The notes below the pieces were generated by a model. The model ran no database searches, had not been told where the DNA came from, and worked only from the letters and a program-made list of their open reading frames with translations. From contig NIVC01000012.1 of the NCBI GenBank assembly GCA_002269645.1, positions 868,001-932,000 on the forward strand: a stretch of 64,000 bases of DNA, read 5' to 3'. Numbering within the stretch: the stretch's first letter is position 1; every line of letters starts with the position of its first letter. This DNA is from Macrostomum lignano. Lineage: Eukaryota. Shown here in pieces: positions 10,191 through 58,308 of this stretch. A program made the translations under genes and the position numbers.

Positions 10191-10492
10191 TCTCTAGCAT
10201 ATAGCTCGTACATGTACATGTAGTTAACATACTACTGGGGGTTAACATGCACAGGGGCAGCTGCGTGCATATTTTACATGTAACATCACAATCACAATGG
10301 AGGCATTTCCTCTCAATCACGTGTACATCTCCGTGATGACATTTTAAAGCTACAAGTTTACAACGTGTTCGGCAAAAAAAATACCGAGGTGCATGTACCA
10401 AGAATACCATTCGAGCATGATCGAGCACATCTCAAGCACTATTCGATAGCAGGCAAACTCTAAAATTAGGAAGTAATGAGCTCCAATTCTAT

Positions 10493-19114: not shown

Positions 19115-19764
19115 AAAGCATTTAAACTTGGGGCTTAAAGCCAATGCATTGTGCTTTGACGTTTAAGGTTATTTAGGTGATATTAAGATTTAAGCTCTTC
19201 TTGGTTTTACTTTTATAGTAAACCTTTTGTATTGCAAGTTTCAGTAAGTCGTCCAAGCCAAGACGTCGGGTAGTCCGGTTGTCCGTTGTGCACTTACTTG
19301 ATTAAATTTTATAGTGTCAAAAATTCTAAAATTCAAAAATGACCGCAAAATTGTCTTCACTAACACATTCCGTTAAAACAAATTTAAAAATTCAAATGCT
19401 TTTACGACGTTTGCACCATTTAAAATATTTACAAATAAATGACATTAAAAACAAATTTTATCTATTAAATATTTCTTCGTTTTGTATTGGTAAGAACAGA
19501 ACTCGAACGACTTGTGTATAAGACTCGTTTCTAAAAGTCTGTAACATAGCAAAAAGACCTACATGATGATATAAACATACTCGGCTTGAGCTTACATGTA
19601 TATACGTGATGATATTTTGTAGTAATACATGTACATGTGTGCCAAAACCAAACTACACATTTCATTCGTGTTTTCATACACATGTATCCATACATATCAT
19701 GCATGTGGTGTGCGTGTGTACGAGCATGCATTTATACGAGTATTCAGAATATTAAATGATCAGC

Positions 19765-20460
19765 AGGAGAGGAAAGGAGAGGAGAGAGGCGAGGAGAGGA
19801 GGAGAGGAGAGGAGAGTGGTGAGGAGACGAGAGGAGAGGAGAGGAGAGTGGTACGTGAGGAGAGGAGAGGAGAGGAGAGTGGTGAGGAGACGAGAGGAGA
19901 GGAGAGGAGAGTGGTACGTGAGGAGAGGAGAGGAGAGGAGAGTGGTGAGGAGAGGAGAGGAGAGGAGAGGAGAGTGGTGAGGAGATGAGAGGAGAGGACA
20001 GAGGAGAGGAGAGGAGAGGAGAGGAGAGTGGTGAGGAGATGAGAGGAGAGGACAGAGGAGAGGAGAGGAGAGGAGAGGAGAGGAGAGGAGAGGAGAGGAG
20101 CGGAGAGGAGAGGAGAGGAGATGAGAGGAGAGGAGAGTGGTGAGGAGAGAAGAGGAGAGAAGAATGGTGAGGAGATGAGAGGACAGGACAGAGGAGAAGA
20201 GAGGAGAGGAGAGGAGAGGAGAGTGGTGAGGAGAGGAGAGGAGATGAGATGAGAGGAGAGGAGAGTGGTGAGGAGAGGAGAGGAGAGGAGAGGAGAGGAG
20301 AGGAGAGGAGAGGAGAGGAGAGGAGAGGAGAGAGGTGAGGAGATGAGAGGACACAGAAGAGAGGTGAGGAGAGGTGAGGAGAGGTGAGGGGAGGAAAGGA
20401 GAGGAGAGAATAGGACAGGACAGGACAATATGAGAAGAGAGAGGTGAGGGAAGAGAGAGC
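19765..20460. repeat. (GGAGA)n microsatellite / purine-rich low-complexity DNA
   Basis: Pentanucleotide periodicity. Confidence 0.95.
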
Positions 20461-25329: not shown

Positions 25330-28300
25330 AGCATTACCATATATGGAGTTAAACAAATACAGCTGTTGAAATCCGGTTCCTTGATCAAACAATGTAGGGT
25401 TCTAAATCATTCTGTTCGCGCGTGATTCCAAAAATAGATTTGACTCATTTTGAAAGAAATGGACTTCCTTAGAATATTACTTTAAGTAGAGCATTACGGT
25501 ATGGTCTAATAACTCTCTACACTCTAATAAGATTAGGGTACTTGAATAATTAAGGGTAGTTTGCTGCTACTAGTCCTATGTTCTATTGAATATTAGTAAA
25601 TAAGTAATTGGAGACACAGAGACAAAACACGAGATTTATTACTTGACCGATTATAGGTATATAGGCATACACAAATATATATGCAGGTTGAAAATATGCA
25701 AAAATTAGTGCAGGTGCGATTGCCTAATTACTGAAGTAGCTTGACACTGTAAATTTGTAGTAATATGTAGTTGGGCTGACCCATTTTCTAATCAGTAAAC
25801 ATTCCACCCCAGTTTTAATTTTTAGCAGAGATTTCCCTTAGCCTGTACTTTCAGCTCTCACTTTTGTAAGTTTGCAGAGTTCCGTACTGGGGACACTAAA
25901 GAAATGGCATTTTTTGTTAAAAAAAAATTGACAAAGTATTTTGGTATTTTTCGTTGCAAAAAACTAACAACTTGCAGGATGATTTTGGCAAGGAAAACTC
26001 CTTTACTTGGACATCCTATACTTCTTGAACAAGGAAACATAGTATGAGCTCAACTTGGCCTAACACTACTATTAATAGCACAAGTGCATGACACTTTGTA
26101 GTGTATTAGATAAGGAAATTGGGCACATTTGACAAACTTTGACCTTGAAAAAAAGAAACTATTATTGGGAAAGCAAACGCTTTTAAGGGGATTTAAATAA
26201 GGAGACATAAAAGAAGATTAATTTAATGTATCGCTTACTAGGGTGTAGGCTATATGTGTGCATTAACACATCAATTTGAAAAGAAATAAGGATTACAAAG
26301 GCAGAAATGGCTAAATTGGATGAGGGATGCAAAAAAATAAGGAATAGAAATAGGGATAAATTAACTTATAAGCAATAAATATTCAGCCCTATTACAATTG
26401 CAAATCACTGTTCTATTCGAGCGTACTTTTAATAATATTTAATCAGCAAAGTAAAACTGTAAGAGTCTAAGGGTCTTATATATGAACTTAGAACTGTAGT
26501 CTTAATTATTACGTACGTACCATTGTAGTAATTGATTTTAAATAGAAGTGGATTAAAACTTTCAAAATTGTCCACTTAGCAAATCAGAATCAGAATCTTC
26601 ATTTTCCTCGTCTACATTGGATTCTTTTTGCCATCGACCTCCAGGAGCATCAGAATGCCAGTGTTTTTCCAGCCAATCATTGACATAAATATCCAGCTTA
26701 AATTTCATCATCAGAAGCCCATTTATTCAAATCCGTAATATATGCTCCAATATTTTTGGTGCAAAGTGTCTTCTCCTGTCAAAGGCAATGTGCTTGTAGA
26801 TAGAAAGCCCTCTTTCAGCCTCAGTCGATGATATTGGCAAAGTTAACACAACCATAATTAGATTTTTCATTCTGGGCAGTGACGTGCTTTGCTTTCCCTG
26901 AGGTGGTCCGGCAGGTTTTGGTATACCACCGCTGCCACCAGTGACGTGCTTTAAGAATTTGGGGTTGCTCGGATTTGGTTCTGAAGATCTTGGAATCCCA
27001 CCGCTGCCACCAGTGATATACTTTCGCTTTTGGTTGCCCTGGGCTGTGGTGTTATTACTGAGAATCCCACCGCTATCACAAGTGTAGTGCTTGGCTTTCT
27101 GGCTTCTGTGGTGGGGTGGACTGCTATCGTCCGAGGCAACCTTGCTTAGTATACTTGTGGGGGCTGAGACTGAGGAGAAATCTTCAATTAAAAGTAGTGC
27201 TGCCACCAGCGTGGGGACCGTAGGATCCGCAATGAAGGGGTCTGTTAGGGTTCCACGCAAATAAATAACGCTAGAACAACTAGTCTCAGATATTTCAATG
27301 TCCAAATGACAGGACTCAATGGTAGCAAATGGCCTAAGCGGCGCAGTCCTGGCACTGACAAATGTCCGCGCTCGAGCGTGTCCGAGTTTAGCTCTCAGAG
27401 GACTCCTCTCCTAATAACCTAATAGCTAAGTCTCTCGCTGATGGGCGGCGAGGAATAGGTCTATGCGCCTGAAGCAGCAATAGACTCACGCTAACTAGTC
27501 TCGCGCAGATGGGCGGCAAGGAATAAGTCTATGCGCCAGTTTGAGATGAGCGTCTATTTTATACAGATTGGCATTTTTGGCCTCCCCCGCCGCCGGTGGG
27601 GTGTCTGCGTGGTTAGCAACGGCGGGGGGTTTTAAGCAATAAAAATCTGGGACTCAGTCCCCCAGTTGTACATGAATTGAGTTAGTTCTAGTTATCATCT
27701 AGTTGTCTAGTTCTAGTTCTAGTTGGCATCTATTTATCGTTTGACATTTGAATTTTGATTAAAGAGCCTTCTATTTTCTTACAATTCAAGTCTAGTTACG
27801 AGTCATGTTTTTTCGAAATCACAAATTTAAATTTTGCGCGAAATTTCGCATATCTTTCACACTTCATAGCTCTGGCTAAAATAAGCGTATCAACGTGCCG
27901 GTGGTCTTATTTTAAAGTAGAAATGATTTCCTTTTTAATGTATATTTCGTTTCTTGATAACTCATTTTCTAAATACCCTTTTTTGCTATAAAAAATACTT
28001 TTTTTTCCGATTCGGACTCTAGAATTGTGAAAATAATTGAGGCGTGAAACGCGGTGGTTCGTTTGCTTTAATTTTTCTTTGATTGTTTTCCGTGTGGAAA
28101 AGAATAGAGTTGAGTAATTGCGTGTTAGGGTGCTGTATATTTATATACGTGTTGATAGAACATTCCGGAATCCGGAAAGTTTGAGAAGCGATTTTTAGAA
28201 AGGGGTGTGTGGGAGTTCAAAATACTAAATATAGAAAGTGCGTGTTTACGCGGAAGTTTCTAGAATATAAGTATTGTACTTACTGTACGCTATCTTATAC

Positions 28301-30699: not shown

Positions 30700-30883
30700 T
30701 AGTATTTTATAATTTCTATTCTACTTTTGTGGAAGGTAGAACACTCTACATATTCTCGATCTCTTCCACCAGGAGCATCTGATGCCCAGTGACTCTTTAG
30801 CTAGTTATTTACATAAATGTCCGGTATAATATTGCCCAGTGGAGGACCATTAATGCGAATTCGTAATAGATGCTCAATGTTGG
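30700..30883 (-). pseudogene. 3' part of an older hAT transposase copy, split by the 30884-40192 insertion
   Basis: Joining 40201 to 30883 across one TSD restores YDRGTRLTSANIEHLLRIRINGPP. Confidence 0.85.
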
Positions 30884-32023
30884 CCCTATTGGAATAAGTT
30901 TTCAGACACTGTGGACAGTGCATCTAGTGCGCCATGGCAATCATAAAGTGGCCTGGACGGTGCGTCATGACAATCTTCAAATCCTAAGGTGGTATGGACG
31001 ATGTGTCATTCAAATCTTCAAATCCTAGGGTGCCATAGCACTTTAGGTTTAGGTGATATTGTGCATGACTCCAGTCTCTATCATGTTCATTCTGATGATG
31101 CATCACTCGTTTTTGAGAGATTTAAAGAGATTGAGAGAAAGTTGTGTGTTTTACCGCACTTGTGTTTTACTGCACTCTGTTCTGTACTGTACTTCTGCCC
31201 CCTTCTGTTGTAGTTGTATCTATTTCTTAATTCTTAGTCTACTCGTCTTTTGACTTACAAAGTTACATTGTTGGTCTATTCAAAGAAAAATAAATAATGT
31301 AAATAGTGTGGCAATTGCATCAGTGAGTACTTAAAATAATTACGAACACTGAAACCCTTTACTTCAATTTGGCTAATCGCTATTACTAAACACAAAATAT
31401 TATATCAGTATGTACTACGTACAGTGTGCTTGAGTAACTGCTTAAGACATTCTCTGGACATAAGCAGTTGTACATGAGATGGATTCATCGTATGTGCACG
31501 TGCAATAGGAGTAAAATAGTGGGGGTAAATGTACGTGCAACTGCTTAAGGCAGAGGCGCAGTATATATAATTCAATATTTGGGGTGCATGCATGGCTGTC
31601 GCTGTCTGACAGACGCAAGCTTAAGACACAGACGTATGCTTACATAACACTACAGTACTGGAGTTGTAAGTAACATCGGTACATGGGCAATACAGCAACC
31701 ACAGGGCATCAGCAAAAGATTCAGCATGATCATAAGGGAGACTATGTTACTTGAAGACAGTCTTGAGTTGAAGGATATTTAATAGTAATAACTTGTGTCT
31801 AGTCTATATGATAATATGAATGTAGAGATGGATTGAAACTGGTTTTTCAATCTAGTTGGTCTCTTTAATAGTCCTAAATCCTCATGCTTCCTATGTGGCA
31901 TCTCTATACTTCTCTTTCTCCAGACATACGAAACTCTTCATCCCTAGACATGAGACATAATGAATGAATGAATGAAATGAAAAAAATAGAAGTTTGTCTA
32001 TAGCCTTAGCCTTTGCAACTCTA

Positions 32024-35000
32024 CTACTTCAGCAAGAGTCGCCCAGTCTCCGACTTCTTGCGCATTAGCACAGGCAGTTTTGCCTTCCGCTTCATTCCCC
32101 GTTGGCGGTAAACATTGTGCTGCCGCAGCCATAGACGGGCTATTTTCTTTACTGTTACAGGCATTGACGACACGCTAGGCGGAATGTGCCAGGAAAGCCT
32201 CGTTCTGAGCTCTAATGTCTCATCCGCCTGAAGTGCGCCCTGCATTCGCTGCCGATCCATGCTGGTGTACAGGCTTTCGACAATGGCTTCGGGGCAGCCT
32301 TTTGCCAAAGCCCAGTCGAGCAAGGCGCAGAGAGCGTTGCCGAACATGCCATACAGCCTACGATCGCTGTACATTGCAGCAAGAAAGTTTTTCTCGCAAG
32401 GAAATATGGTGAGCGGACCAGTTCCCGCGTCAATGGAGAACTTTCCCTGCTCGCTTGCATGACTGTTCATGGACAGCAGTCGGCCCTCGGGGCAATCGGC
32501 GCCAAAAATTATTCGGCGACAGTGCAAGGAGTCTGCGTCGGCACCCCAAACAATGCTACGAATCGTGTCACGCCAGACAGCATGCAATTCGTTGCTAGTC
32601 AAATCGCCAAACAGTTTCTCTAGAGACGGACGCGTTCTCGCAGCTTCAAAGGCCAAATGAAACGCCTGCTGACCATGTAGAACGAAGGCGTGTTCATGTC
32701 GCAGAAGGACTTGATAATTTGCACCGGTTTTGCGTACACGGCCACAAAGAGCGCCAATATAGCCCGTTATGTTAAAAGCTGTGTTCAACAGGTTTATTGG
32801 TCTCGACACAGCGACGGAGCTTCGCCGGCTTAAAGCGCTGATCAGCATGGTGACAAAACTGCGAGCCGAAGCCACCGCCGTTTGCAACGTCATCTCAGCA
32901 GCCGCACCCTCATCCTGCTGGTCCAAGTCATGGGGTTCGTCTTCGTCATCTTCGGCTTCCTCATCGGCAACTTTTACCAGCTCTGTTAGCGTGAAGGGGA
33001 ACGAAGCCGATGGGCTAAGCGAAACCTCGCGGAAAAGCCCTTTCTCAATGTCGTCCCATCTTGCTGACAGAAGTGGCAGACAGCCGGCAGACTCCCTGAC
33101 TACTCTAGCGGCAGTCTCTGAAGATGTTCGTAAAGCTTGCTCTAGCGCTAGCAGGCTGCGACGCATCACATCCAGTTGCATTGACAAATTGGTCACTTCG
33201 TCAACGATTTGCCAAGCGGGCAGCTGAAGGTTTTGGCTGCGGAGCATGACAGCACAGAACATGCGCAGCACATCGTATGCAACTAGGAGCTCTACGATGA
33301 ACGGAACAGACTGGAGAAACTCCAAGAATTCCCGGTCCATACGTCGTAAACTCGAACGATTTTGCGCTAATGTCTCCAACCAAATTGCCAGTTCGGTGAC
33401 GGTCTTCTTCACCATTGCAAAACTGGATGATGTAAATCTGGTAGAACTGAACGACTGGGTTTTTAGAGCAGGCCGATTCTCCATCATCGCAGCTACTTGG
33501 TCGGCTGCCACCGTCAGCTTGCCCTGCTGAATCTTTCTGTGCAGCCAGTTCATTGCCTTCACAAGTCGTAAAACAGTTCCGCTCTGTTTTTTTACATCAC
33601 GGAAAACAAGATCCAACCAATGGGCTGGGTCCCAGACGACTCCAAAGAATTCTCCGTCAACATCAACACCATCCTGCTGCTCAACGCTCGCACTCGGCAA
33701 CTCGCTATCGCTGAGGTCTGCCTGGATGGCCTGCTTCAATGTGACAACAAAGCCTTCCACTTGGTACTGCCCATCAGCTGTAATGCCTGCACAACGGGAC
33801 AGACTCGTTCCAGCATTATGAGCTGCCTGAGATGCAGACCTGGTGTAGAGAAAGAGAAAGAAGATAATTATTACAAATTCTGGTTTCGTAACATGCAATT
33901 TAATATCGATTGATTTCTTTGGATTGATATACATGCAATAGGTAAATCGCTTACATAGCGAGAGCTTTTGCCTGACCCCCAGAGAGGCGATAATCCGCAG
34001 GGTGATAAACACCCGGCGCACCAAAGCAGTAGGCCGTGCGAATGCCATTGGAGCTATAAGCACATGCCATCACAGCTTGATTTGTTGTGCGGCCTGGAGT
34101 GCTTTTGTCCATAGTAAGACAGTAGAATGGTGGAAGCGAAGTTGATGGCAGCGGCTCATTTAAAGACTGCAGCACCTCCTCCATGAGCACCGTATCAGCT
34201 ACCTGCCAAATCCGGACACAGGCCTTACGTCCATGCTGCATTTCACCAACTGTCACACCAACAAAGTCCATGGCCGCGACGATAGTCTCGTAGTGAGTTG
34301 CAGCGCAGGCAATGTTGATAATCGTGAGAGCTGATGTGACAAGGGCCGTTGCAGCCACTAGGTTCCGCTCCAACTGTGCTGCCTTCCGATCTGCTGCAAG
34401 TTGGGCCCTATGAAGTAAGAGTATGAATGACGGAAATAGAGTTCAATTACGAAATTGTCGTGTCATAACTCATAATGGCTAATGCCGCTAATATCGTGAT
34501 TGGCTTGGTGCTCCGCATTTTATTTATCGTTATTACTAATACTACATAGAGTACTTTTACTGCCATATGTACCATGAGACATACAACTTACTTGATATGC
34601 AGTTCGCACGTGCTGTGCTGCTCAAGGCGATTGCAAAATTGTCGAAATCCACTGTCTGACTTCGATTCGTACTTGGCCATCTGTTCCTCTGAGAGGACGA
34701 GACCCACCCCATCCAAGCGATTAGGCAGTGGTAATTCGGCCTGGTCCTGTAGGTGCGTAAAGCACAACGTACAACGCAGAAGAGCGGCACCAAATGTCCC
34801 AGAAGTCCCAGATGCACTTGACTTGCTGGGAAGCAAGGAGAAATGAGCCATCTCAGTCTGCAGAAAATTGTACGGTGGGCATATAAAATGTCATTAGATG
34901 ATTTTATCTTTAGCAAAATTACAGAATTCATTAATAATGATAGGACGAAAATCCATTGAATCATACAAGACTACTCACTTTCTCGAGAAGTTCTCTCAGC

Positions 35001-36190
35001 GATCTCACTTGCACATGCGATGCACTTACAGACGTTCTCGTAGTCAATGGCGATTGGTCCTGGCCCTTGCATTTGCAGGAATTGCAGCTCATTGAACTGT
35101 GCCTCTCTGCGAGCTTGTCAACTTTTGCAGCCACTACTCTAATCCCTTGCAGAACTGCATCCAGAGTTGGCTCATTGGGAATCTCAGGATCTTCGCTGTG
35201 CAGCGCAGTCTCCGACGATAGAAAACATTCTGCCAGTGTTCTTTGGCGCTGAAGACGGTGTTGCTGTGCTCTTTGAACCTGCACAACTGAAGCAGACGTA
35301 GATCCAGTCCCAGACTGCTCATCTGACTCGCACATCAGCTCGGCAGAGTCAAGTGGGGGAGGCGAACATCTAATCAGAGTCGGAGCCGAATCTTCGAGGT
35401 CTAGTTCCACTGTGACAGTCTTAGAAACTGTTGATATTGACATAGATGATCGCTCCTCTGGCACTTTTTCTTCAACAACTACACCCACTTCACTCGCAGG
35501 CTGTTCAACCATCTCAGGAATCCCAGCCTCAGCCTCTGTGACTGTGGCTAACATGTCACCATTGTCATTGCTGTTGCTGGCACACTCTCCCGTGCTCAGC
35601 TGACTGCTCTCACCACTTCTCTTCCTTTTCTGCTTCTTGTTCAAACTCTTGCTCTTGTCCTTTTGCAAGCCGCCAGATTTGCAAGTTTGCAGTAGATCGA
35701 TGACGAGTGGGTCTTTTTGACTACGCCAATCTGGTGGGGCATTCCCAGCACAATGCCTACTGGTTTCAGCATGCTGCTTTCGTTGCCTTTCGCGGCTACT
35801 CTCGCAAAAGCGCAGTTGAAATCCAGGACCACCAGTGCCATCAATGAAGTGCTTGAGGCACACAACACAATATTTCTTTTCTTCCTTCTTGTTGCATTCA
35901 CCCTCTCTCTCCTTTCTCTTCCTTGAATGTGTAGGCTGAGCAGATGCAGACGCAGACATGTCACTGCCACTGCACACAGCACTATTACTCTTCATCCCTA
36001 TTCGATTTCTAAACGACGCCCAGACAGATTCTGCTGAAGCTGAAGCTCTTGGAGAAGCACTTGGACATCCTGGAGTCGGAGATGGAATGTCTACTTCATT
36101 GACTTCAACTGAATCAAGTCTGCCATCACTGCTACTAGTACTAGTAGTACCACTATCATTGGAGTCGCTGCTATTGAGTTCAGCCAACAT
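32024..36190 (-). CDS. Intact spliced hAT-like DDE transposase, 1248 aa; exons 36190-34979, 34857-34592, 34407-33955, 33839-32024
   Basis: Three GT-AG introns join in frame (3747 nt, no internal stop). Two C2H2-type fingers (CVVC..HAETSRH; CTLC..HSTCELH). Catalytic-like motifs CLTMDKST, TADGQY, WDPAH (in place of CxxH) and CPEAIVES. Confidence 0.85.
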
Positions 36191-36662
36191 TGCACCTCTT
36201 TTTATGTAAATGTAACACTTATTTAAACTGAAATGACAGGAAGGGAGTGTATAAATTAAGCAGAATATGTGGCCTTTAAATAATAAAAATAAATAAAATA
36301 AATGACCTTTTATCTATGCATTACAATTACTGTTTCTTTACTAATTTGTATGAGTAAATTATACTATAAATTTTAGAAAACACTAATTAGAAAAACGGTG
36401 ATCGAGTGACTGCCTAAATGAGTCACAAAAATGGTCCCTTTCTAGGGCTTTATCGCCAGACGAGTCACATATATTTCCCACTTTGATCTGAGGATCAAAT
36501 TTCACTATTTAAGTTCTTTAAATTTTAAGGTGCCACAATATCAGATATCACTTTGAAAATTGAAAGCGAAAAGTGCAGGAAAAGTGCATTAATTGGTTTA
36601 AATGAGCATATTACAATCCAAGCAATCAAAACCAAAGCCAAAGTGGCACATTAAGGTCTAAG

Positions 36663-39214
36663 CCCAGTGAAAAATGATTCATGGATTCCACGTGGGTTCC
36701 ACGTGGCCATGTGGAATTTAAATGTTTCTTTAATTTTTGCAAATTAATGACTTAAAGATGACATAATGGTATGCAAAGTATTTTTTATGCATTATTTTTT
36801 TATTTTTACTGTCCTAATGTTGATGTGGATTTTACAAGGAATTCATGAGAAATAAGCGTATATTGATTCAACATGGAATCCACTTCGATAAAAAACTGTG
36901 ATACACCTTATTTAGACGTTTTTATGAAATTACTAAAATTAATTATTATATTTATATGCTTTTAAGTAAAAATTATTATCTAAAAGCTAAATTATAATCG
37001 GAAAATAAGACACTGTTTGTTAAAATAGACAAAATAGAAGTTAACAATAAAAAACGTTTCGTACGTTTTAAAATTAAATTAATTTTATTTTATATTCGTC
37101 AATGTCTTGGTCCAAGGCCTTGAAAGATAAAGTGCCTTGTTTATGGCTATTTAAGCACCTTAAAAATTTTAGTAGACCTAGCCTATAGGCAATAACTTAC
37201 GAGTATAAGGCCATGGCCTCCATGGGATTAGAAATTAGATAAATCAGTATTTTATCATAGATAGGCCTAATACTTTTGGTAAAATCCATGATAAATTTAT
37301 TTAGGCCTAGGCCCTATCCAATTTCTAGGAATCCCATGGCCATGTCCATAGATTGGCTACTCATTTTTTAACTTAAATAGGCCTTTAGAAGTTCATAATT
37401 TCCTCTTAGTCCTACCTATCTATTTATATGTATGCTTATTAGGCCTATTTTAAGCTAGGCCTATAACTATCAATTTAGGTCCTTCTATTTTAATTAAGGT
37501 TGGGAGTTGGGACTAGCTTGACTTTGTGAATTGTGACTAGTCAATCTAGTTAATCTGTTAAAAATCTATTAATTTATGATTTTCTTCAAAAAAGCCTATT
37601 AGCATCTTTTGGACTTGTTGCATTTTTAAAAACAGTATTATTAATTATAATAAATAATTCTGCATTTACACTTGCAACTTGCTTTTGGCATAGCTAGCCT
37701 AGCAGATCCCTAAGGTTGCTATTATAAATAAATAATGATTATTGTAAATTTGATCTGATTTAGGCCAAGTCCAGAATTTAATAGCCATAGGCATAGGGCA
37801 TAGCTATTTAGGCTTAGGCCTAATGTTAAATCATACTAGGCCAGCAAATATAAAAAAACATGCATTGCTTTGCCTAAATACTTTATAGTTTAAAATCAAT
37901 TTTAAAATAAAAAATTAAATTTATAGAAACATAGGAATATTAATTATTTTTGTATTTATTATTTTATTGGTTTATTGATTGACTTAGGTAGGGTTTTCTT
38001 TTTTGCTAGAGACAAAGTGCAAAATTATATCCTATGCTCACTTTCAGGGTTTTATGATTTTAAGGCTTAGAATGCAATTTCTCTTTTTTCTTATATAAAG
38101 GCAGTGCAAATAAGGCTTCAACAGAAAAATAGGTAATGAAATCGCACCTAAACTGTATCCACTTTTTAATTTCAATTTTCAAGGTGCAATTTTAAAATTT
38201 AAGGCGCATATGCACACTTTGCGCTTAAAAAAATAAACCTAGAACTTAGGCCTAGTTAATTTTAAAATAAACTTTATTAAGTATTCATCCTTAAATTAGT
38301 TTTATGAATTATATCAATATAATCTATCAATCTTAATTGGCAACAATTATTTTTCTATTTCATTCATGCCTAACATTACATGGCCCATCCTCAAACTTGG
38401 ATGTCACCTTGGTCTTTCCTTTGAAGAAGCATGCAAAGCTACTTGGAATTTGAATATAATATCTAGAATGCTACCTTTTGTGAAGCAATGGTAAGTTTTA
38501 GTTATAAACTGATATTTTTCTGTTATCAAAATCTGTTATAAGATCAAAATCTATCAAAATCTATTACAAAATCTATCATCAATCTGTTATAAAATTCTGT
38601 AATTTAACCCCTTTCTTTTCTAAGGTTTCTCACCTGACCTGAAGAAGCAGCATTCTGGCAATTGGCAGCAGCATGTTTCTGACTGTTCTAATTCTGGTGC
38701 ATTATATTATTGTTAATTAATTAATGCTATTGACAATGTCAATTTCAAATTATATATTATATCATATGCGCAGCGCAACTTTAAAGATATCAATATCTAT
38801 ATCTGTGTGTTTATTCTTTGTGTGCCAGTGACTCACTACTGTATATAAATACACCTTACTTATTGAGACATCCTTTTTGAATATATTTTTGTGCAGAAAT
38901 ATTTTTTCGCTATAGCTAGTGTTTTTATCTGTGTTTCAGTTTCTTTTATATGGTATTGAGATCTGGGGTTCATATGAAGTTTTGAGATCTGATATTATTT
39001 TGAGATTTAGGATGCAACAATTTATTATGGCAACCAGTATAATGGCTGTTTACTCAATGACAATGTGGATTCTATGTGAAATACATAATTACTTCCATGT
39101 GGATCTTCCATGTGGAATCCATATCTCAATTCCACATGGATGGACGGAGACAAATGCACATATGGATTTCATATGAAAAATCCACATGGAATCCATATAC
39201 TTTTTTTCACTGGG
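36663..39214. mobile_element. Non-autonomous CMC/EnSpm-like TIR element, 2.55 kb
   Basis: Termini CCCAGTGAAAAA / TTTTTCACTGGG, AAG on both flanks (3-bp TSD), many (T/C)CCATGTGGA subterminal repeats at both ends, decayed exon-like remnants at 38.3-38.7 kb. Confidence 0.8.
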
Positions 39215-40200
39215 AAGGATAATCAATCGAATCATTTGGGTCAATTCAGACAATTCTGAAACGAAAGGTCACACAGTGTGCCACCATTTCAAGATGATCT
39301 TTTAATTTAACATAGAAGGATTAATTTTCAATAAATATTCATGCTGTACTAGCCATTAAAAATTACAGTTAAAAGATATAAATGAGAGATGTTTTTGTAT
39401 GCAACAAATATTAAGCTAATTAATGAAATAACAATGACAACAGTTAATACAAAATGAAGAAACTACGTGATGAACAACACAGAGTTCACGAACAAACAAA
39501 ATTGTCTTTGCCTTATCCACACACTTTTTCAGTAGTAGTTGTAGCACTTTGGCTCGGGTCGGGTTATCAAATCTGATAACTATTTAGCATGGTGTTTCGA
39601 AGAATATTTTCACATTTAAATGTCAGCATAAATAAATGTACGCGCAACCAATCAAAAAGATAATTAAACAAAGCAGAAAATTTGTTGAGACTTTTAATAG
39701 AATTTAGTTTACTTTTTTATTTCTTGCAACTGCGTTATAAGAGAACATTAAGAGCAATTAGCATTTGGCACTATGTTATAATGTTTATGAGGCAATAAAG
39801 AACATTTCTGCTACGATCTTTCAACTACAATTTCCAATTTTACGATTAACTTGCATGCATATTCTAGATGACACAGCAATCAATACATATGATAGGAGAT
39901 ATGCTATACTATAGCCCATAGCAATATTATCAAAGTTATAGAAATTAGAAAAACAAGTTTTACTTACAGTTTGCTGAATTTCCACCGTGCTGCTGACTTT
40001 CTCCTGTGCATGCTTCTCATCCTTGTTCAGCAGCGCTGTATGTAGCGCGTGATGTCCTCCTTGCATCTTACCTGTGAGCTGCTGTGCGTCATGGCGCATG
40101 GCGCGCGTAGCGCGCCATGCGCCATGACTATGAGGAAAAAGAAAAAGTGCGCCGGACGCCGTCCGCGAAAATACCACTTATTCCAATAGGGAATGTTGGC

Positions 40201-41010
40201 AGATGTTAACCGTGTTCCTCTATCATATTCTATATGTTTATAGATAGAAAATCCTCGTTCTGCATCAGCTGAAGAAAAAGGCAAAGTTAACACCCTGAAT
40301 TTGTTTTTTTATTCTAGGCATCCATTCAACTGTCTGTACTTCAAGAAAAAAAGCCCAGAATGAAACAGGACTTTTAAGCTTGTAGGCGCAGAATTCAGTC
40401 TTGTGAGCTATTAAGCTATGAATGAGTATTTGAAACTGGCCAGATATTGTCCTTTGCGACCTCCTCTGATGCCCCTGTGCTTGGCTCGAATGAGAATCAG
40501 AATCAGATGATACTGTTTACATTTCATCTTCGGCAGAATCATCTTGCATTCCAAGGCGTCTAGCTAGATGAATAATATCAATATACCAAAACAACCAAGT
40601 ATACCAAAACAATTCCAAGTGTCTTCAGTAGGTAAAGTATCTATGTAGTTGAGTAATAATATTGTCAATGATGTCAGCTCAAATATCTTTTAGTGGTGGA
40701 AATTTATTTTCGGATCTTTCGGCAGCACTTGTAGCAGAGGACGAAGCAGAACTTGCACATGAGCGACCCCTAGTACCTGTAGCACGAACTGAGCAAGGTT
40801 GCTTTATTAAAAATGTTGAGTTCTGTCTTGTCCTATAAAGCATCGAAAGTTAGTGTGAGAGGTCATGTGTCCAGCAGCGGGATCGGTACTCTGTCTCCTC
40901 GGTATGCCCTGTCACTACTCAGCACTTGCAAGAGTTTAGGAGTGCTGTTGTGCTAGGCCCATTTTCAGTTTTCAGTACTTCCAATGAGTTTATTAAGCGC
41001 CCACACAGGA
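40201..41010 (-). pseudogene. 5' continuation of the split older hAT transposase copy
   Basis: LTLPFSSADAERGFSIYKHI; colinear with 58.5-59.3 kb. Confidence 0.8.
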
Positions 41011-41173: not shown

Positions 41174-42568
41174 GTTACAAGAATACTGCCAATTAATTTG
41201 GTTACTCGTCAAATTCAAATGATACAGCGCCTGGAATAACAATAGCGTTAGCTGATGATCGATACATCAATGAAAGTGAAGGATATAAGAAAGAGGAAAT
41301 AGATAATTTATTGTTAGCAAAGCGAAATGTTTCAGACTCTTAATCAAATGAAGATAGTGACGCAGTGAATATCACCATGTTACAATTAATTGACGATGCT
41401 CATGGGCGCGTAAACAATGTCTACACAAAAAAACCGAGATTGACACTAAGATGTATTCTAAAAATTCTAAAACTGAAATTAACACTAAGATGTATTCTAA
41501 AACTGAAATTGGCACTTTATTAGCAGAAAGGCAAGGTACTGCGGGGGGTATAGAGAGTTCGAAATTAGTCAATGTACTTTCATTACTGACTTCAAACGCT
41601 TCCCATCCTGACATGAAATTGACAGCTTCTCATAACTCTTCAGCAGCATATCATGTTGCAGATTCAAACCCAGCTTCAGAATGGAGCAGTGTAGATGACT
41701 CAGACAAGTGGATACGATTTCAATTTTTAAAAAGAGCTAGGAAAGTTGTAGAGATAAAGTTGGAAGGAGAGGTGTGGCCTGGTTGGTCTGTTAGTGTTAG
41801 CCTAAATGGAACAAACTGGGCACCTGTTGAACAAAGTGCACCCATTGAACTACGAAGGGGCAATGCACATCTTAGGAAACAAATACCCAATCCCTCATAT
41901 TATTTCCTTTATTCTCTTAATTTTTCTGGTTCTGTAAAGCTTAAAAAAGTTGAATTACTTGAGAGACAAACAGTGGTTAATGATTTAGTGTGGGCTATAG
42001 ATAGACTTCAAGCTGTACAAAAGCTATACGTAGACAATGCGCTTGAATCAGTGGAGCTGCGACTAAGACGGGGACTAGGTTTCAAATCTTATACAGGATA
42101 TATTCCCTCACTAGCAACATACCAAAACTATAGAGAAAGGGGTTTCAATGTAGCGTCATCAGGAGCATTTAAAACGTCAGATAATTGGGGTTATATAGTA
42201 TCTAATTCAGAATGGGCATCGGGGAATGATTCCAATTTTTACATTGAAGTACAACTTCCCGAGTCTATTCAAATTTGGAAATTCGGATTGAAAGGAACCA
42301 AAGCAGTAGGTAGTGAAATTATAAAAAAATCAACCGAAATGTTTTATTCCAAAAGGTAGCAATAACAAGAGAGACTTTAAGAATCTTTTCTACCGAAAAC
42401 GCTGGTTTAGTTTCTGGAGTGATGAAGTATTTCGAAATAGCTTCCACCGAAAAATTATCCGTTTATAGAGTGCATATTAATTCAGCCACTAAAGGATCAA
42501 CTGTTCTTATTGTTTCAGGCTTTCAACTTTATCCGATTTTAGACATATTGCCACATAAAAATGAATGA
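41170..42568 (+). pseudogene. Fibre/receptor-binding-like protein with Y(S/T)KTEI(D/N) repeats and discoidin (F5/8C)-like segments
   Basis: Frame starts at ATG 41170, has two early stops and an A7 frameshift (41427-41433), then the 302-aa ORF, then a frameshifted tail ending FQLYPILDILPHKNE*. Domain call from motif memory. Confidence 0.55.
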
Positions 42569-43462: not shown

Positions 43463-45700
43463 TCATTTGAACCCGTGAGGATGCGTTATAATTCCATTGG
43501 ATTCAATGTATCTTTTGTCATCGAAAGGACTAATGGCCTTCTTATTTTGTTCTTTTAAAGTCATGTTATGCTTGTCTGATCTAAGGCTATACACTTTCCT
43601 ATAGACTGGTTCGTTATAATCAAGTAGTATATTTCTATAGTCATCATATTGTACATGATGCTTCACTGTTGACTTTGAGATTTCCTTTAATTTTTTCTTC
43701 TCCTTCCCTTCATTTTGATTGCTGACACAAACTGTTTTAAATGAATATGCTTTCGATCTTAGAGCGGTTACTTCTGTCATTATGTAATTATATTTTGCCA
43801 ATTCATCCTTGAATGTTCCCAGCTTTCCACAATTAGTCATATCATGTAAATCAATCGGATTTTTTTAGTATACAGCGACAAATCAAAATGCTCCTTCATC
43901 TGAGGAATGTCTTTATAAATATTTTCTGTCTTCACATAAAGAATGAATGAGTCGGTGTCAGAGGTAACAATCTCAACATTATCTCCCCATTTGGACTTGA
44001 AAACTTTATAAAACGTTTCATACATACGCAATTTCGAGAGATCCAGAATTGCTTGTCCAGCATATGTTGGCTTTGTTCATTAGATTTTCATTAAATATTT
44101 TAAAGTCTATAAAATCTGGCTTGGATATTATCTTAGATATGTCATCCTCACCTGTCAGCAACTCAAATCGCTTTCTCTTTTTAACATCCTCCATTGTCTT
44201 GCCAAAGATGCTTACATTAAGCATTTTGAACTGATTGTCTTCGAACTCAATTTTGCTTCTTTTGCCTTCTTTCTTTCTATCGTATTAAACTCGATATACT
44301 CCTTTAACCATGGCTTTTCATTGAATGATATCGTCCTATGTACTTTTGTAACTTTCAAGCCCATCTCTTCATATAATCGCAATAGCTTATGATGTACAAT
44401 ATATTTTGATTTATTTTTTAAATTAAGGATCAATTTAGGAACTTTTCCAATCTTTTTCATTTCGACTTCTAGATATCTTTTCTGATATTCACTCAATTCA
44501 GTTTCTGACACCGTTGCACTTTCAGGTGCTAATGGGAAGGCATACGTTTTCTTTTTTGATTCTTCTGTATATTCAAGATCACATTCAACAAGACAGCCAC
44601 GTCCTTCAGGGGGATTTTTATAATAGTTGGAATCAGCTTCCCATTTAAAGTCAGAAAAAGGAAGAGGTTCCAACATACTATAACCATAGAGATTTGTACA
44701 ATCAACGTAAAGTAAGTAGGAAGTTGGATTTTTTGAAAATAGCCTGGAAGATAAGGATTATTTGCCTTTACATATCTTGACCCTAGAACTCCACTAAATC
44801 CGCCTCTTATTCCTCTATCAATCATATGAATCATATCGATATCCGCCAGCAAGTCTAACTCAACTTTACTTTTCTTCAACCCAGCATTCAAACTCAATCC
44901 TGGTGCTGAGAAGCATCTGGCTGGATCGATCTGAAAGTGTTTCAGGAAGAATTTTCTATAGTGTTCGAATACATCTGCTAATAATAGAACGTCAACTTTA
45001 AGATACAGCATCATATAATCCTCCAAATTCGTACAATTAAAAGTTTTCCACATTTGTTTTGCAAAATTATATTCATCTGAAGAAATGTCTTCACTTTTCA
45101 ACCTCGAGTAGAACTCTTTCAATGGTGGTAACTCAGTTTCTGCTAATCTTCCAAAGCTTCTGATATACTCATTAGAATACACCCCTGCGCTTAACATATT
45201 GAAAATCGCTTTCGTTTTTAAAGTATTTCTTTGTTATGATAAAGTCTTCATCCTTCAGGGACTTTGCGCAGATATCAAGCGAGGAAGCCAAGAACCTGTA
45301 TGAATCTAGGAACCTCAGTACTACTTTGTTACATCCAAACTCGAGATAAATGTACTCTTCAGAAGTTTTAGATAGTGGAGGAAATAATTTATCCTCCATG
45401 GTCTTTGCTCTTTAAGTGTGTGACCAAGAAGTGAAAGTCATAGTGGGATCCATTCTGGAAATAGATTGGGATTACTCGCTTCTTACTCTCGAGAGCATTG
45501 CAGGATTTACAGGCAGCCCCTCTATTTTTGCCACTATAGTGACAATGTTCTCTTACCTTACCTAGCTTAAGTGTAAAGTCATTTTTACAATTCGCACATT
45601 TTTCAGCCTTGTAAAACTCTCCATTGTTGCTTACTGAAGTAATCAGTTTTCAATTCTCAGTCACTGATCGACAAACCGATCACATCCGGAAAAAAAGCCG
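43463..45700 (-). pseudogene. Protein-primed DNA polymerase B with endonuclease-VII-like Zn module, several frameshifts
   Basis: CANC..VREHCHYSGKNRGAAC..CN; NGSHYDFHF; FLDSYRFL; YVDCTNLYGYSM..LP; NVSIFGKTMEDV; SDTDSF; PFDDKRYI. 5' end missing. Confidence 0.92.
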
Positions 45701-46029
45701 GGTAATTTTAAGTGTTGCTATGTATTGTAAGTAGAGAAAAAAGCAGTCAGGCATTCTTAGTTAAATCACAATAGTCAACAGTAGTGAGTCTTCCCGACTC
45801 CTCACGGAAGAGGAATCGGTACCAGCCAGCACCTAGGGCTTGTACAGCCAGGGCGTATTCGCCGTCGGAAGCTGTAACATTCTCGGGGTACATGTACCCT
45901 GGAGGTGGCCGCGCAAACACCCAGTTTTCGAACGCTGCAATGAGAGAAGACGCAGGCCATTACTACCCGATCAGCTTGTTAATAAACAAAAAGCGCAATA
46001 TTTGCTTACCATCTCTCACGTAACGCATT

Positions 46030-46170
46030 TGTGTGCAGCACAATAGTGTTGGAAGAAATTGTTTCTTGCCCATGGTTTTAGCAAGCTAACTCGACTTCCT
46101 GTCATCACAGATGCTCCATCTGTTGCAACGCCCCATAGTCATTGCGAAACAACTGTCGCAATACTATCTT
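46030..46170 (-). pseudogene. Short hAT transposase fragment of the 58-62 kb family
   Basis: WGVATDGASVMTG..KPWARNNFFQHYCAAHK matches WGMTTDGAAVMTG..RPWAKNNFFQHHCAAHK. Confidence 0.8.
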
Positions 46171-46234
46171 GACTCAAGTTGCACTCAAGTGCAACTCAAC
46201 TACTCACTGTGAGTGATGAGAGTGTTGCCACCCC

Positions 46235-58275: not shown

Positions 58276-58308
58276 ATGTAATGTATCTTATCAGACGTCA
58301 ATGTCAAA

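What the first reader, a model, noticed from the sequence alone, without database searches (positions are those of the whole stretch)
30884..40192. Intact 9.3-kb transposon with atypical CCC termini and a DGQY/WDPAH transposase, in a three-level nest
Perfect TIRs and a perfect 8-bp TSD define the element, and removing it restores the reading frame of the older hAT it invaded. Its 4-exon, 1248-aa ORF is the only long intact mobile-element gene in the window. The 8-bp TSD and fold are hAT-like. However, the termini are CCCTATTGG rather than (C/T)AG, CxxH is replaced by WDPAH, the second Asp lies in DGQY, and there are two N-terminal fingers. It may be a poorly described, recently active hAT-related clade. 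A CMC-like element sits 470 bp upstream of its ATG.
Basis: partly seen in the sequence, partly recalled or inferred. Interest (0 to 1): 0.8.

Follow-up and report, generated by a model that had tools for sequence, protein, structure and literature searches.

The report
Divergent hAT-type transposon with unusual ends
This is a complete 9.3-kb cut-and-paste DNA transposon in a Macrostomum flatworm genome whose 1248-aa transposase belongs to a distant branch of the hAT superfamily that no Pfam family matched and no source names, with its own conserved end sequence; it is a real and tidy find, but a variant of a known kind of mobile element.

Summary
Removing it restores a hAT C-terminal reading frame that aligns straight through the junction with two uninterrupted paralogues. 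The minus strand carries a 4-exon, 1248-aa gene with three GT-AG introns.

The protein matches no Pfam family and no solved structure by sequence. An exhaustive HMMER scan found about 300 relatives, in Macrostomum lignano, Hyalella, Styela, Sanderia and unnamed assemblies. All named ones are "uncharacterized". An AlphaFold model built on these relatives (pLDDT 89.6) matches only the Hermes hAT transposase among solved structures. A profile-profile comparison with canonical hATs gives 96.9% probability (E 1.8e-10), with D, D and (C/D)xxH in register.

Three further insertions from two other M. lignano lineages also have 8-bp duplications and ends of the form CC(C/A)nnnTGGA. The odd termini, DGQY, W-D-x-x-H and two N-terminal fingers are therefore family traits.

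Verdict: a divergent, discrete clade of the hAT superfamily, probably recently mobile. Repbase and Dfam could not be checked. The nested 2.55-kb element (3-bp duplication) is real, but its "CMC" label is untested.

The parts
30876..30883 (.). [quoted passage not shown]
   Evidence: Read directly. Identical to 40192-40199.
30884..30899 (+). Left terminal inverted repeat CCCTATTGGAATAAGT (the 3' end relative to the gene)
   Evidence: pair I22: 16 nt, 100% complementary to 40176-40191. Unique in the window.
30929..31020 (.). Left subterminal repeats: GCGYCATGRC at 30929-30938 and 30962-30971, plus a 41-nt tandem pair at 30939-30979 and 30980-31020
   Evidence: all 5 exact GCGYCATGRC matches in the 64-kb window lie within about 110 bp of the two element ends. 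family D2.
32024..33839 (-). Exon 4 (aa 644-1248 plus stop). Carries the second catalytic Asp (D666 in ADGQY), W713-D714-x-x-H717, the all-helical insertion domain, and E1161/E1165 in PEAIVES
   Evidence: gene model; conservation; secondary structure of the model.
33955..34407 (-). Exon 3 (aa 493-644). Carries the first catalytic Asp (D593 in LTMDKST...TNQA)
   Evidence: Junctions are colinear with homologues, some intronless.
34592..34857 (-). Exon 2 (aa 405-493). Second, BED-like zinc finger: C433, C436, H485, H491
   Evidence: C/C/H/H are conserved in 26/27, 26/26, 30/30 and 30/30 aligned members.
34979..36190 (-). Exon 1 (aa 1-404). Low-complexity N-terminus with the first C2H2-like finger (C108-x2-C111...H140-x5-H146) and basic, NLS-like runs
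   Evidence: The finger is similar to P0013 (E 4e-5), and the same pattern occurs in P0003, P0165 and P0154.
36663..39214 (.). Nested non-coding TIR element of 2,552 bp, in the 5' non-coding region 472 bp upstream of the ATG. Ends are CCCAGTGAAAAA.../...TTTTTCACTGGG, with CCACRTGG-type subterminal repeats. The 3-bp TSD (AAG) is at 36660-36662 and 39215-39217
   Evidence: pair I2 (36-nt arms, 81%). Sequence read. No ORF of 80 aa or more except one 85-aa ORF. No other copy in the window.
40088..40128 (.). Right (5') subterminal palindrome GTCATGGCGCATGGCGCGC/GCGCGCCATGCGCCATGAC, containing three GCGYCATGRC motifs
   Evidence: pair I8 (19-nt arms, 100%).. A comparable CATGGCGCGC...GCGCGCCATG palindrome sits at the 5' end of the L007 relative.
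40149..40166 (.). Conserved 5' subterminal box GCGGAC(G/A)GCGTCCGGCGC (reverse-strand reading), 10 nt inside the TIR
   Evidence: Shared almost base for base between the window's right end and the gene-proximal end of the M. lignano relative in L007.
40176..40191 (-). Right terminal inverted repeat (the 5' end relative to the gene)
   Evidence: pair I22..
40192..40199 (.). [quoted passage not shown]
30766..30875 (-). Older hAT remnant, distal part (the host of the insertion)
   Evidence: 72% nt identity to the window's other hAT at 58376-58485. ORF restored across the junction.
40211..40996 (-). Older hAT remnant, proximal part (insertion domain and C-terminal dimerisation region)
   Evidence: tblastn of canonical hAT P0156, aa 441-668, 39% identity, E 1e-29. 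blastn 70% to 58505-58752.

Best explanation
The element is a structurally complete, autonomous-type cut-and-paste DNA transposon of a deep, discrete clade within, or immediately beside, the hAT superfamily. It lies in the genome of Macrostomum lignano or a very close relative.

Its single gene encodes a 1248-aa transposase. The parts, in order, are:
- an N-terminal C2H2-like finger;
- a BED-like C2H2 finger;
- an RNase-H-fold DDE catalytic domain (D593, D666, E1165; H717 lies in a W-D-x-x-H motif just after strand 5), split by a helical insertion domain of about 440 aa, as in Hermes.

Inferred mechanism, by analogy with Hermes and Kat1:
1. The fingers bind the GC-rich subterminal GCGYCATGRC/GTGCGC motifs and palindromes.
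2. A multimer pairs the CC(C/A)nnnTGGA ends.
3. The enzyme nicks at the ends and forms hairpins on the flanking DNA, with the histidine of (C/D)xxH in the active site.
4. It releases the element and joins its 3'-OH ends (...GG-3') to target phosphates staggered by 8 bp. Repair of the gaps yields the 8-bp duplication.

What is shown: the element's anatomy, the 8-bp TSD, the precise insertion into an older hAT remnant, family membership, the fold, and conservation of the catalytic residues.

What is inferred: hairpin chemistry, which residues bind which DNA motif, and present-day activity. This copy later received a 2.55-kb non-autonomous element between its 5' end and the ATG. That insertion may impair its own expression but should not stop mobilisation in trans.
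For: Anatomy and insertion.

Family: the phmmer scan of 1.84 billion representatives gave 300 hits at E<=1e-3 and 97 at E<=1e-10.

Conserved residues across aligned members:
- D593 39/43
- D666 40/40
- W713 44/45
- D714 44/45
- H717 41/44
- E1161 and E1165 22/23 each

Structure: the AF2 model with the family alignment has pLDDT 89.6 and pTM 0.85. Its topology is b1-b2-b3-a1-b4-a2-b5, then a helical insertion, then the helix bearing E. In Foldseek against the PDB, the top 12 hits are all Hermes (E 3e-4 to 7e-3, probability 1.00, TM 0.54-0.60 for the best-fitting chains and 0.29-0.41 for the others, normalised to Hermes, 470-665 alignment columns). The next hit is ISCth4 at E 0.27. No P-element, RAG1, Transib or piggyBac structure is in the top 50.

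Sequence homology to hAT: hhalign of the family against 5 canonical hATs gives Prob 96.9%, E 1.8e-10 over 454 columns, with DKST~D.T.D, DGQY~DGAAV and WD.AH~HCAAH aligned. The family HMM hits all five canonical hATs colinearly at 9-23 bits, against 42 bits or more for family members.

Mobility of the family:
- Two 6.34-kb M. lignano copies are 99.3% identical at different loci, each with its own 8-bp TSD (GCACTATG, TGGCCATC) and TIR CCAGGATGGAATTCTTGC.
- A third lineage (44% aa identity) spans 7,959 bp, with TSD ATGTAAAG and TIR CCCYATTGGAGCGA.
- Subterminal boxes are shared with that lineage.

Subterminal motif: all exact copies lie at the element ends.

Mechanistic analogy: Hermes H268 and Kat1 C402/H405 are required for catalysis and hairpinning (PMC4763223).

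Host identity: the window's other hAT is 99.0% identical over 3.3 kb to M. lignano NIVC01000196.1.
Against: - The canonical hAT terminal consensus 5'-(C/T)A(A/G)NG (from my own knowledge) is not met. The ends start CCC or CCA.
- Pfam's hAT models (the Pfam hAT/BED models such as Dimer_Tnp_hAT, zf-BED, DUF4371, DUF659) find nothing in this protein at E<=10, or in 52 relatives at E<=1.
- A profile comparison restricted to the C-terminal region is not significant (E 0.56), although the register VESFYS~aERvFS is as expected.
- MuDR, Kolobok, CMC and Dada transposases have no solved structure as far as I know (none appeared in the top 50). Foldseek therefore cannot exclude that one of them would match as well as Hermes does.
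- The canonical hAT profile used had only 5 sequences, all of one hAT group (FAM200/ZBED5-like).
- There is no RNA evidence for the splice model. Exon 1 is only weakly supported by comparison.
- No second copy of this lineage was available, so its age and activity are not measured.
- The nested insertion shows the copy has sat long enough to be hit itself.
Confidence: 0.85

Rival explanations
1. The element belongs to another C/DxxH superfamily that makes about 8-bp duplications (P, MuDR/MULE) or to a further one (Kolobok, Dada, CMC, Zisupton/KDZ). On this view it resembles Hermes only because all these enzymes share the RNase H core.
For: The motif is D-x-x-H rather than C-x-x-H. The D form is usual in P, MuDR, Kolobok and Dada (PMC3706591, PMC9587614). 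The termini are not hAT-like. The protein is long (1248 aa), like Dada or Zisupton. One relative (P0123) has an N-terminal OTU protease domain; from my own knowledge, proteases are often captured by MULE, CACTA and Zisupton elements. Structures for MuDR, Kolobok, CMC and Dada are, as far as I know, not in the PDB, so cannot rank them.
Against: - P-element transposase and RAG1/Transib structures have been published, yet none appears among the top 50 Foldseek hits, while 12 Hermes chains do.
- No THAP, Tnp_P_element, MULE, SWIM, KDZ or Transposase_21-type Pfam hit was found in 52 members.
- hhalign and the family HMM link the family colinearly to bona fide hATs, from upstream of D1 through about 270 aa of the insertion domain.
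- The D2-to-E spacing is 499 aa, with a large helical insertion domain. This is hAT-like and unlike MuDR (about 100-130 aa, from my own knowledge).
- TSDs are 8 bp at four independent insertions with unrelated sequences. This excludes Kolobok (TTAA; PMC9587614), CMC (2-4 bp) and Dada (6-7 bp, in small RNA genes; PMC3706591).
- Kolobok termini are RR..YY (PMC9587614), not CC..GG.
Confidence: 0.08
2. It is a dead relic or a domesticated host gene rather than a transposon capable of moving. The intact ORF would be kept for a host function, or be intact by chance, and the copy would be immobile.
For: Only one copy is in the window. A 2.55-kb foreign element separates the 5' end and presumptive promoter from the ATG. 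The Hyalella homologue's locus shows no recognisable TIRs or TSD. No exact product is on record in the public protein collections.
Against: - Perfect 16-nt TIRs, a perfect TSD, and conserved subterminal boxes shared with a 44%-identical relative show that the ends are still those of a mobile element.
- All catalytic and finger residues match the family consensus.
- Sister lineages in the same genome have near-identical copies at different sites.
- The element lies inside another transposon's remnant, not at a conserved host locus.
Confidence: 0.07

Closest known systems
hAT superfamily transposons (Hermes, hobo, Ac, Tol2, Buster, Tip100; solved representative: Hermes transposase, PDB 2bw3, 4d1q, 8sjd)
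   Same: - 8-bp TSD; short TIRs (14-18 nt); subterminal repeated motifs.
- A single transposase gene with an N-terminal C2H2/BED-like finger.
- An RNase-H DDE core interrupted after strand 5 by a large all-helical insertion domain.
- A histidine-bearing (C/D)xxH motif at the start of that insertion, and the catalytic Glu in an E-[RS]-x-[FY]-S-like helix.
- Hermes is the only significant structural match. Profile homology to canonical hATs is significant.
   Different: - Termini are 5'-CC(C/A)nnnTGGA instead of 5'-(C/T)A(A/G)NG.
- W-D-x-x-H replaces x-C-x-x-H.
- D1 lies in D-K-S-T, without the Trp two residues after D1 (Hermes W182; PMC4763223).
- D2 lies in D-G-Q-Y.
- There is an extra N-terminal finger and a long low-complexity N-terminus. 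The protein is 1248 aa against about 600-700.
- The element is 6.3-8 kb against the usual 2.5-5 kb (PMC3942097).
- No Pfam hAT/BED model detects it.
- There is a clear score gap to canonical hATs.
hATx-6 of Hydra (an example of Repbase's divergent 'hATx' group; PMC8721813)
   Same: A metazoan hAT with 8-bp TSDs.
   Different: The hATx-6 transposase is 674 aa and is recognised by Pfam zf-BED and the hAT dimerisation domain (PMC8721813). The present family is recognised by neither. hATm and hATw could not be compared because no sequences were available here.
P-element / THAP9 superfamily
   Same: 8-bp TSD; D-x-x-H form of the shared motif; a large insertion domain between D2 and E.
   Different: No THAP finger or Tnp_P_element Pfam match. 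The P-element transposase structure is not among the Foldseek matches listed. P termini start CATG (from my own knowledge).
Uncharacterised predicted proteins: M. lignano A0A1I8HD42, PAA79047.1 and PAA79914.1; Hyalella azteca XP_018017477.1; Styela clava XP_039253066.1; Sanderia malayensis EP00794_P002259
   Same: True family members at 24-47% identity, with the same DKST, DGQY, WDxxH and EAxVES motifs. The M. lignano ones sit in elements with the same type of ends and 8-bp TSDs.
   Different: They are different lineages; the nearest is 42-47% identical. None is annotated as a transposase. The window's own protein is not on record.

Membership tests
hAT superfamily | 8-bp target site duplication | tested here: met
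   AATGTTGG in the window. GCACTATG and TGGCCATC and ATGTAAAG in M. lignano relatives.
hAT superfamily | Short TIRs (10-25 bp; PMC3942097) | tested here: met
   16 nt perfect. 18 nt and 14 nt with 1 mismatch in relatives.
hAT superfamily | Terminal consensus 5'-(C/T)A(A/G)NG (from my own knowledge) | tested here: not met
   The ends are CCCTA, CCCYA and CCAGG. Only the first C agrees. Shifting the boundary by 1 nt destroys the TSDs.
hAT superfamily | RNase-H DDE domain split by a large all-alpha insertion domain; fold like Hermes | tested here: met
   AF2 model pLDDT 89.6. Foldseek: only Hermes chains are significant, TM 0.54-0.60 for the best-fitting chains (0.29-0.41 for the others), normalised to Hermes.
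hAT superfamily | C-x-x-H motif after the second Asp | tested here: inconclusive
   The position is occupied by W-D-x-x-H (D 44/45, H 41/44) and aligns to HCAAH of canonical hATs. The His is kept and the Cys is replaced. C/DxxH is the accepted clan-wide form (PMC9587614).
hAT superfamily | C-terminal hAT dimerisation domain (Pfam PF05699) | tested here: inconclusive
   No Pfam hit at E<=10, and none in 52 relatives. C-terminal hhalign gives E 0.56, but with VESFYS aligned to aERvFS. The Foldseek alignments run 470-665 columns against the 474-550-residue Hermes chains, but whether they reach the Hermes C-terminus was not examined.
hAT superfamily | N-terminal BED-type zinc finger | tested here: inconclusive
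   The pattern C-x2-C...H-x5-H is invariant in the family. It is modelled as strands plus helix. Pfam zf-BED does not match.
hAT superfamily | Detectable sequence homology to bona fide hAT transposases | tested here: met
   hhalign Prob 96.9%, E 1.8e-10, 454 columns. The family HMM hits 5 of 5 canonical hATs colinearly.
hAT superfamily (Ac, Buster or Tip group) | Placement within one of the three described major groups, with its TSD consensus (nTnnnnAn or nnnTAnnn; from my own knowledge) | not testable with these tools
   No reference set of Ac, Buster and Tip transposases was available for a tree. Four TSDs are too few for a logo, and they fit neither consensus consistently.
P-element superfamily | THAP finger, P-type transposase domains, fold like Drosophila P transposase | tested here: not met
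   No Pfam THAP or Tnp_P_element match. No P-element structure among the top 50 Foldseek matches.
MuDR/MULE superfamily | MULE transposase domain, SWIM finger, short D2-E spacing, 8-11 bp TSD | tested here: not met
   No Pfam MULE or SWIM match. D666 to E1165 is 499 aa with a helical insertion domain. No solved MuDR structure, as far as I know, for a fold comparison.
Kolobok | TTAA target duplication and RR..YY termini (PMC9587614) | tested here: not met
   8-bp non-TTAA TSDs and CC..GG termini.
Zisupton/KDZ | KDZ transposase domain (Pfam); 8-bp TSD | tested here: not met
   No KDZ Pfam match in 52 members. Only the TSD length agrees.
CMC (CACTA/Mirage/Chapaev): for the nested element at 36663-39214 | CACTA-type termini, 2-4 bp TSD, subterminal repeats, CMC transposase in autonomous partners | tested here: inconclusive
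   A 3-bp TSD (AAG) and CCACRTGG-type subterminal repeats are present, but the termini are CCCAGTG, not CACTA, and there is no coding capacity. No autonomous partner was found in the window.

The most novel reading that the evidence does not exclude
The family is a fourth major, metazoan-wide branch of hAT, or a sister superfamily, that has escaped curated protein-family annotation. It would have its own end chemistry: CC termini recognised by a two-finger N-terminus, and Asp instead of Cys in the active-site (C/D)xxH. It would still be transposing in Macrostomum lignano. If so, it supplies an endogenous, potentially engineerable cut-and-paste vector for a flatworm model, and a natural experiment on what the Cys/Asp and the terminal dinucleotide do in hairpin-forming transposases.
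Probability: 0.35. Interest if true: 0.6.

Novelty: new variant of a known kind. Interest (0 to 1): 0.5.

Why it matters
hAT elements are among the best-understood eukaryotic transposons and the source of several gene-transfer tools and domesticated genes. This clade keeps the Hermes-like architecture and the 8-bp staggered integration. It changes three features usually treated as hallmarks: the terminal nucleotides, the Cys of CxxH, and the Trp next to the first Asp. That makes it a useful comparator for how end recognition and hairpin formation work.

The family is invisible to Pfam-based annotation. Genome projects label it 'uncharacterized protein' in at least four animal phyla, so TE content and 'orphan genes' in those genomes are being misassigned.

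Intact copies with perfect ends occur in M. lignano, a regeneration and germline model, and could be tested as an endogenous transposon vector.

The practical limit on the claim is that Repbase and Dfam, where such a clade might already be filed under a hAT subgroup, could not be consulted.

Tried and rejected
1. Pfam on the ORF pieces, the full 1248-aa protein and 52 relatives found no transposase family.
2. Sequence searches of PDB chains with exon 4, the core and the family profile gave nothing meaningful; Hermes was not detected by sequence.
3. The word-indexed homology search with the full protein returned nothing, and with the family profile only 3 hits. Its 8000-candidate pre-filter is probably swamped by low-complexity words. 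The exhaustive HMMER scan was what found the family.
4. The single-sequence AlphaFold model was useless (pLDDT 37) and was replaced by the alignment-based model.
5. I looked for TIRs and TSDs around homologues in Hyalella (L001) and three metagenome or Logan contigs (L004-L006) and found none convincing. These copies may be truncated, degraded or domesticated.
Genome-wide copy number of this lineage could therefore not be obtained.
7. No other copy or fragment of the element, or of the nested element, is in the window.
8. C-terminal-only profile alignment to hAT was not significant.
9. UniProt names P0020 a 'DUF4371 domain-containing protein', but this Pfam copy did not reproduce that, so I did not use it as evidence.
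10. Literature searches for a described family with these features (hATm/w/x, Macrostomum hAT, DxxH) found only general context.
11. I considered reading the ends as CAGG with a 9-bp or shifted TSD. I rejected this because the flanking direct repeats then no longer match.

Full report
**1. What is in the sequence**

The finding's coordinates enclose a textbook insertion.
- Positions 30884-30899 (CCCTATTGGAATAAGT) and 40176-40191 are a perfect 16-nt inverted repeat (pair I22).
- They are abutted by identical 8-mers, AATGTTGG, at 30876-30883 and 40192-40199.
- The element is therefore 30884-40191, or 9,308 bp.
- The 16-mer has no other match in the window at up to 2 mismatches.
- No other copy or fragment of the element is present.

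Deleting the element plus one 8-mer creates an open frame across the junction, LTLPFSSADAERGFSIYKHIEYDRGTRLTSANIEHLLRIRINGP. This is the C-terminal block of a canonical hAT transposase. The same block occurs in two other hAT copies in the window. The reconstructed empty site aligns colinearly through the junction with both of those uninterrupted paralogues, which have one copy of the 8-mer position. The remnant that was invaded can be followed at 30766-30875 and 40211-40996.

**2. The gene**

On the minus strand, four open segments join through three canonical GT...AG introns of 121, 184 and 115 nt. Together they form a 3,747-nt CDS encoding 1248 aa. The exons are 36190-34979, 34857-34592, 34407-33955 and 33839-32024.

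Support for the splice model varies by junction.
- The second and third junctions give a protein colinear, without indels, with homologues. Some of those are encoded by single uninterrupted ORFs (loci).
- Exon 1 is less secure. Its C2H2-like finger (aa 107-173) is similar to the N-terminus of the M. lignano homologue P0013, and to DNA upstream of the core on the same strand in L007.
- No RNA data could be consulted.

**3. Other parts of the element**

- The non-coding ends carry GC-rich repeats. All five exact matches to GCGYCATGRC in the 64-kb window lie within about 110 bp of the two ends.
- The gene-proximal end has a perfect 19-nt-arm palindrome at 40088-40128 (pair I8).
- A 2,552-bp non-coding TIR element lies at 36663-39214, 472 bp upstream of the ATG. 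Its ends are CCCAGTGAAAAA..., its TSD is AAG, and it has CCACRTGG-type subterminal repeats. Without it the host element would be about 6.75 kb.
- Its 3-bp TSD and subterminal repeats are compatible with CMC. Its termini are not CACTA and no partner was found, so I leave it unclassified.

**4. Whose genome**

The other hAT in the window (58270-61601) is 99.0% identical over 3.3 kb to Macrostomum lignano contig NIVC01000196.1. Its protein is 96% identical to BOX15_Mlig021755g1. The window therefore comes from M. lignano or a very close relative.

**5. What the protein is**

Direct annotation fails.
- No Pfam family matches at E<=10.
- No PDB chain matches by sequence.
- The word-indexed protein search returns nothing.

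An exhaustive phmmer scan of 1.84 billion representatives with aa 405-1248 found 300 proteins at E<=1e-3 and 97 at E<=1e-10. The named ones are all 'uncharacterized' or 'hypothetical':
- several M. lignano proteins (best 42-47% identity);
- four Hyalella azteca loci;
- Styela clava;
- the jellyfish Sanderia malayensis.

The rest are unnamed ENA, Logan or JGI contigs. None of 52 aligned members matches any transposase-related Pfam model.

The alignment defines the family signature, in full-protein numbering:

| Feature | Residues | Conservation |
|---|---|---|
| BED-like finger | C433-x2-C436...H485-x5-H491 | invariant or nearly so |
| T-x-D-K-S-T...R-x-T-N-Q-A | D593 | 39/43 |
| D-G-Q-Y | D666 | 40/40 |
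| W-D-x-x-H | W713, D714, H717 | 44/45, 44/45, 41/44 |
| G-x-E-A-[IV]-V-E-S-[FY]-Y | E1161, E1165 | 22/23 each |

The window's copy has the consensus residue at every one of these positions. A first, more N-terminal C2H2-like finger recurs in distant members.

**6. Relationship to hAT**

With the family alignment as input, AlphaFold gave a confident model (pLDDT 89.6, pTM 0.85). The model shows an RNase-H core: strands at core residues 184-190, 198-206 and 212-218, a helix at 235-248, a strand at 256-261, a helix at 268-284, and a strand at 307-309. D593 lies in strand 1 and D666 just after strand 4. W-D-x-x-H sits at the start of a helical insertion domain of about 440 residues. E1165 lies on the helix after that insertion.

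Foldseek against 350,542 PDB chains returned twelve Hermes transposase chains as the only convincing matches:
- E-values 3e-4 to 7e-3, probability 1.00;
- TM 0.54-0.60 normalised to Hermes for the best-fitting chains (0.29-0.41 for the others);
- alignment lengths of 470-665 columns, at 8-11% identity.

The next hit is ISCth4 at E 0.27. No P-element, RAG1, Transib or piggyBac structure appears in the top 50.

Sequence evidence agrees.
- hhalign of the family profile against five canonical hATs gives 96.9% probability and E 1.8e-10 over 454 columns. DKST aligns with D.T.D, DGQY with DGAAV, and WD.AH.LdL with HCAAHkLeL.
- A family HMM hits all five canonical hATs colinearly at 9-23 bits. True members score 42 bits or more, most of them far higher. 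The clade is discrete.
- The C-terminal region alone is not significantly similar (E 0.56). Even so, the alignment puts VESFYS on the hAT aERvFS block, which points to E1165 as the catalytic Glu.

**7. The odd ends are a family property**

| Source | Length | TSD | TIR |
|---|---|---|---|
| Window element | 9,308 bp | AATGTTGG | CCCTATTGGAATAAGT |
| L002 (M. lignano) | 6.34 kb | GCACTATG | CCAGGATGGAATTCTTGC |
| L003 (M. lignano) | 6.34 kb | TGGCCATC | CCAGGATGGAATTCTTGC |
| L007 (M. lignano) | 7,959 bp | ATGTAAAG | CCCCATTGGAGCGA / CCCTATTGGAGCGA |

- L002 and L003 lie at different loci. They are 99.3% identical to each other, and their protein is about 24% identical to the window's (BLASTP; 29% by phmmer).
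- The L007 protein is 44% identical to the window's.
- The common terminal pattern is CC(C/A)nnnTGGA.
- L007 also shares with the window element a subterminal box, GCGGAC(G/A)GCGTCCGGCGC, and a CATGGCGCGC...GCGCGCCATG palindrome at the gene-proximal end. All three lineages have GTGCGC-rich subterminal repeats.
- Moving the boundary by one base to obtain a hAT-like CAG start breaks the TSDs.

**8. How it most likely works**

Shown here:
- a bounded element with an 8-bp staggered-cut signature;
- a Hermes-like DDE transposase with all predicted catalytic residues intact;
- conserved end and subterminal motifs;
- multiple independent insertions in the family, including a nearly identical pair.

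Inferred from Hermes and Kat1 biochemistry (PMC4763223; PMC10368747 for BED-subterminal binding):
1. The fingers bind the subterminal GC-rich motifs.
2. A multimer synapses the ends.
3. Cleavage proceeds by a nick and a flank hairpin, with the (C/D)xxH histidine in the active site.
4. The ...GG-3'OH ends attack the target 8 bp apart.

[quoted passage not shown] The family lacks the Trp two residues after D1 (Hermes W182) and has an invariant Trp before the Asp of W-D-x-x-H instead. Whether that Trp takes over the stacking role is speculation.

The nested 2.55-kb element lies between the 5' end and the ATG. It may have silenced this copy's own expression. The ends would still allow mobilisation in trans.

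**9. Rivals**

- Another C/DxxH superfamily (confidence 0.08). Arguments against it are the hAT-specific profile hits, the absence of P-type structures from the listed matches, the 499-aa D2-E spacing with a helical insertion domain, and the TSD length and sequence. The caveat is that MuDR, Kolobok, CMC and Dada have no solved structures as far as I know, and no profiles for them were available here.
- A dead or domesticated gene (confidence 0.07). Arguments against it are the perfect ends, the conserved cis-motifs, its location inside another TE, and the mobility of sister lineages.

**10. Novelty and limits**

Within what could be checked, the clade is unannotated. That covers Pfam 2025, UniProt, NCBI and EukProt names, PDB, and 8 million open papers.

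It meets most defining features of hAT: TSD, TIR length, fold and profile homology. It fails one (the terminal consensus). It is equivocal on three: CxxH, the Pfam hATC domain and the Pfam BED domain. I therefore file it as a new variant within, or beside, the hAT superfamily. It is not a categorically new system.

Three limits apply:
- No formal phylogeny was possible.
- Copy number, age and transcription of this lineage remain unmeasured.

Noticed in passing
window 58270-63832 (minus strand): A canonical hAT element (FAM200/ZBED5-like; motifs D...D...HCAAH...AEAERGFS). It is 99.0% identical to an M. lignano copy that has an intact 679-aa single-exon ORF (L008). In the window copy the ORF is split into 263-aa and 440-aa pieces that overlap at 59561-59631, which looks like a frameshift. 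About 1.3 kb at 61602-62936 is absent from L008, so it may be a further nested insertion.
   Followed up: partly
window about 3240-20430: A 17-kb stretch made almost entirely of different minisatellite arrays, with periods of 15-40 nt. Examples: a 22-nt unit x76 at 6367-8032, a 32-nt unit x29 at 13148-14069, and a 15-nt unit x40 at 16039-16646. The strong GC skew and long spurious ORFs there are due to these arrays.
   Followed up: no
window 43463-45399 (minus strand): Fragmented ORFs with a weak protein-primed type-B DNA polymerase match (Pfam DNA_pol_B_2, E 3e-4). This suggests a Polinton/Maverick-like remnant next to the hAT remnant.
   Followed up: no
window 41451-42359 (+): A 302-aa ORF with an F5/8 type C (discoidin) domain (E 5e-7). 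It lies between pieces of the old hAT remnant (40211-40996 and 46028-46177). It may be a host exon or captured sequence.
   Followed up: no
window 26634-27305 (minus strand): A third hAT C-terminal fragment (weak Dimer_Tnp_hAT match) of the same hAT family as the invaded remnant. I used it as a second paralogous empty site.
   Followed up: partly
L005 3457-6909 (Logan SRR31186252 contig; protein P0123): A distant family member (23% identity, 1150 aa) carries an N-terminal OTU-like cysteine protease domain (E 1.6e-4). This may be a case of protease capture by this transposon family.
   Followed up: no
window 32000-36200 versus 36200-40000: The transposase coding region is 48-51% GC. The element's 5' non-coding region (mostly the nested element) is about 30% GC, and the flanks are 38-40%. 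I did not test for horizontal transfer.
   Followed up: no
window 56860-58177 (minus strand): A GC-rich (57%) block with Ala/Lys/Arg-rich ORFs of 212-285 aa lies directly next to the hAT at 58270. Its identity is unknown.
   Followed up: no
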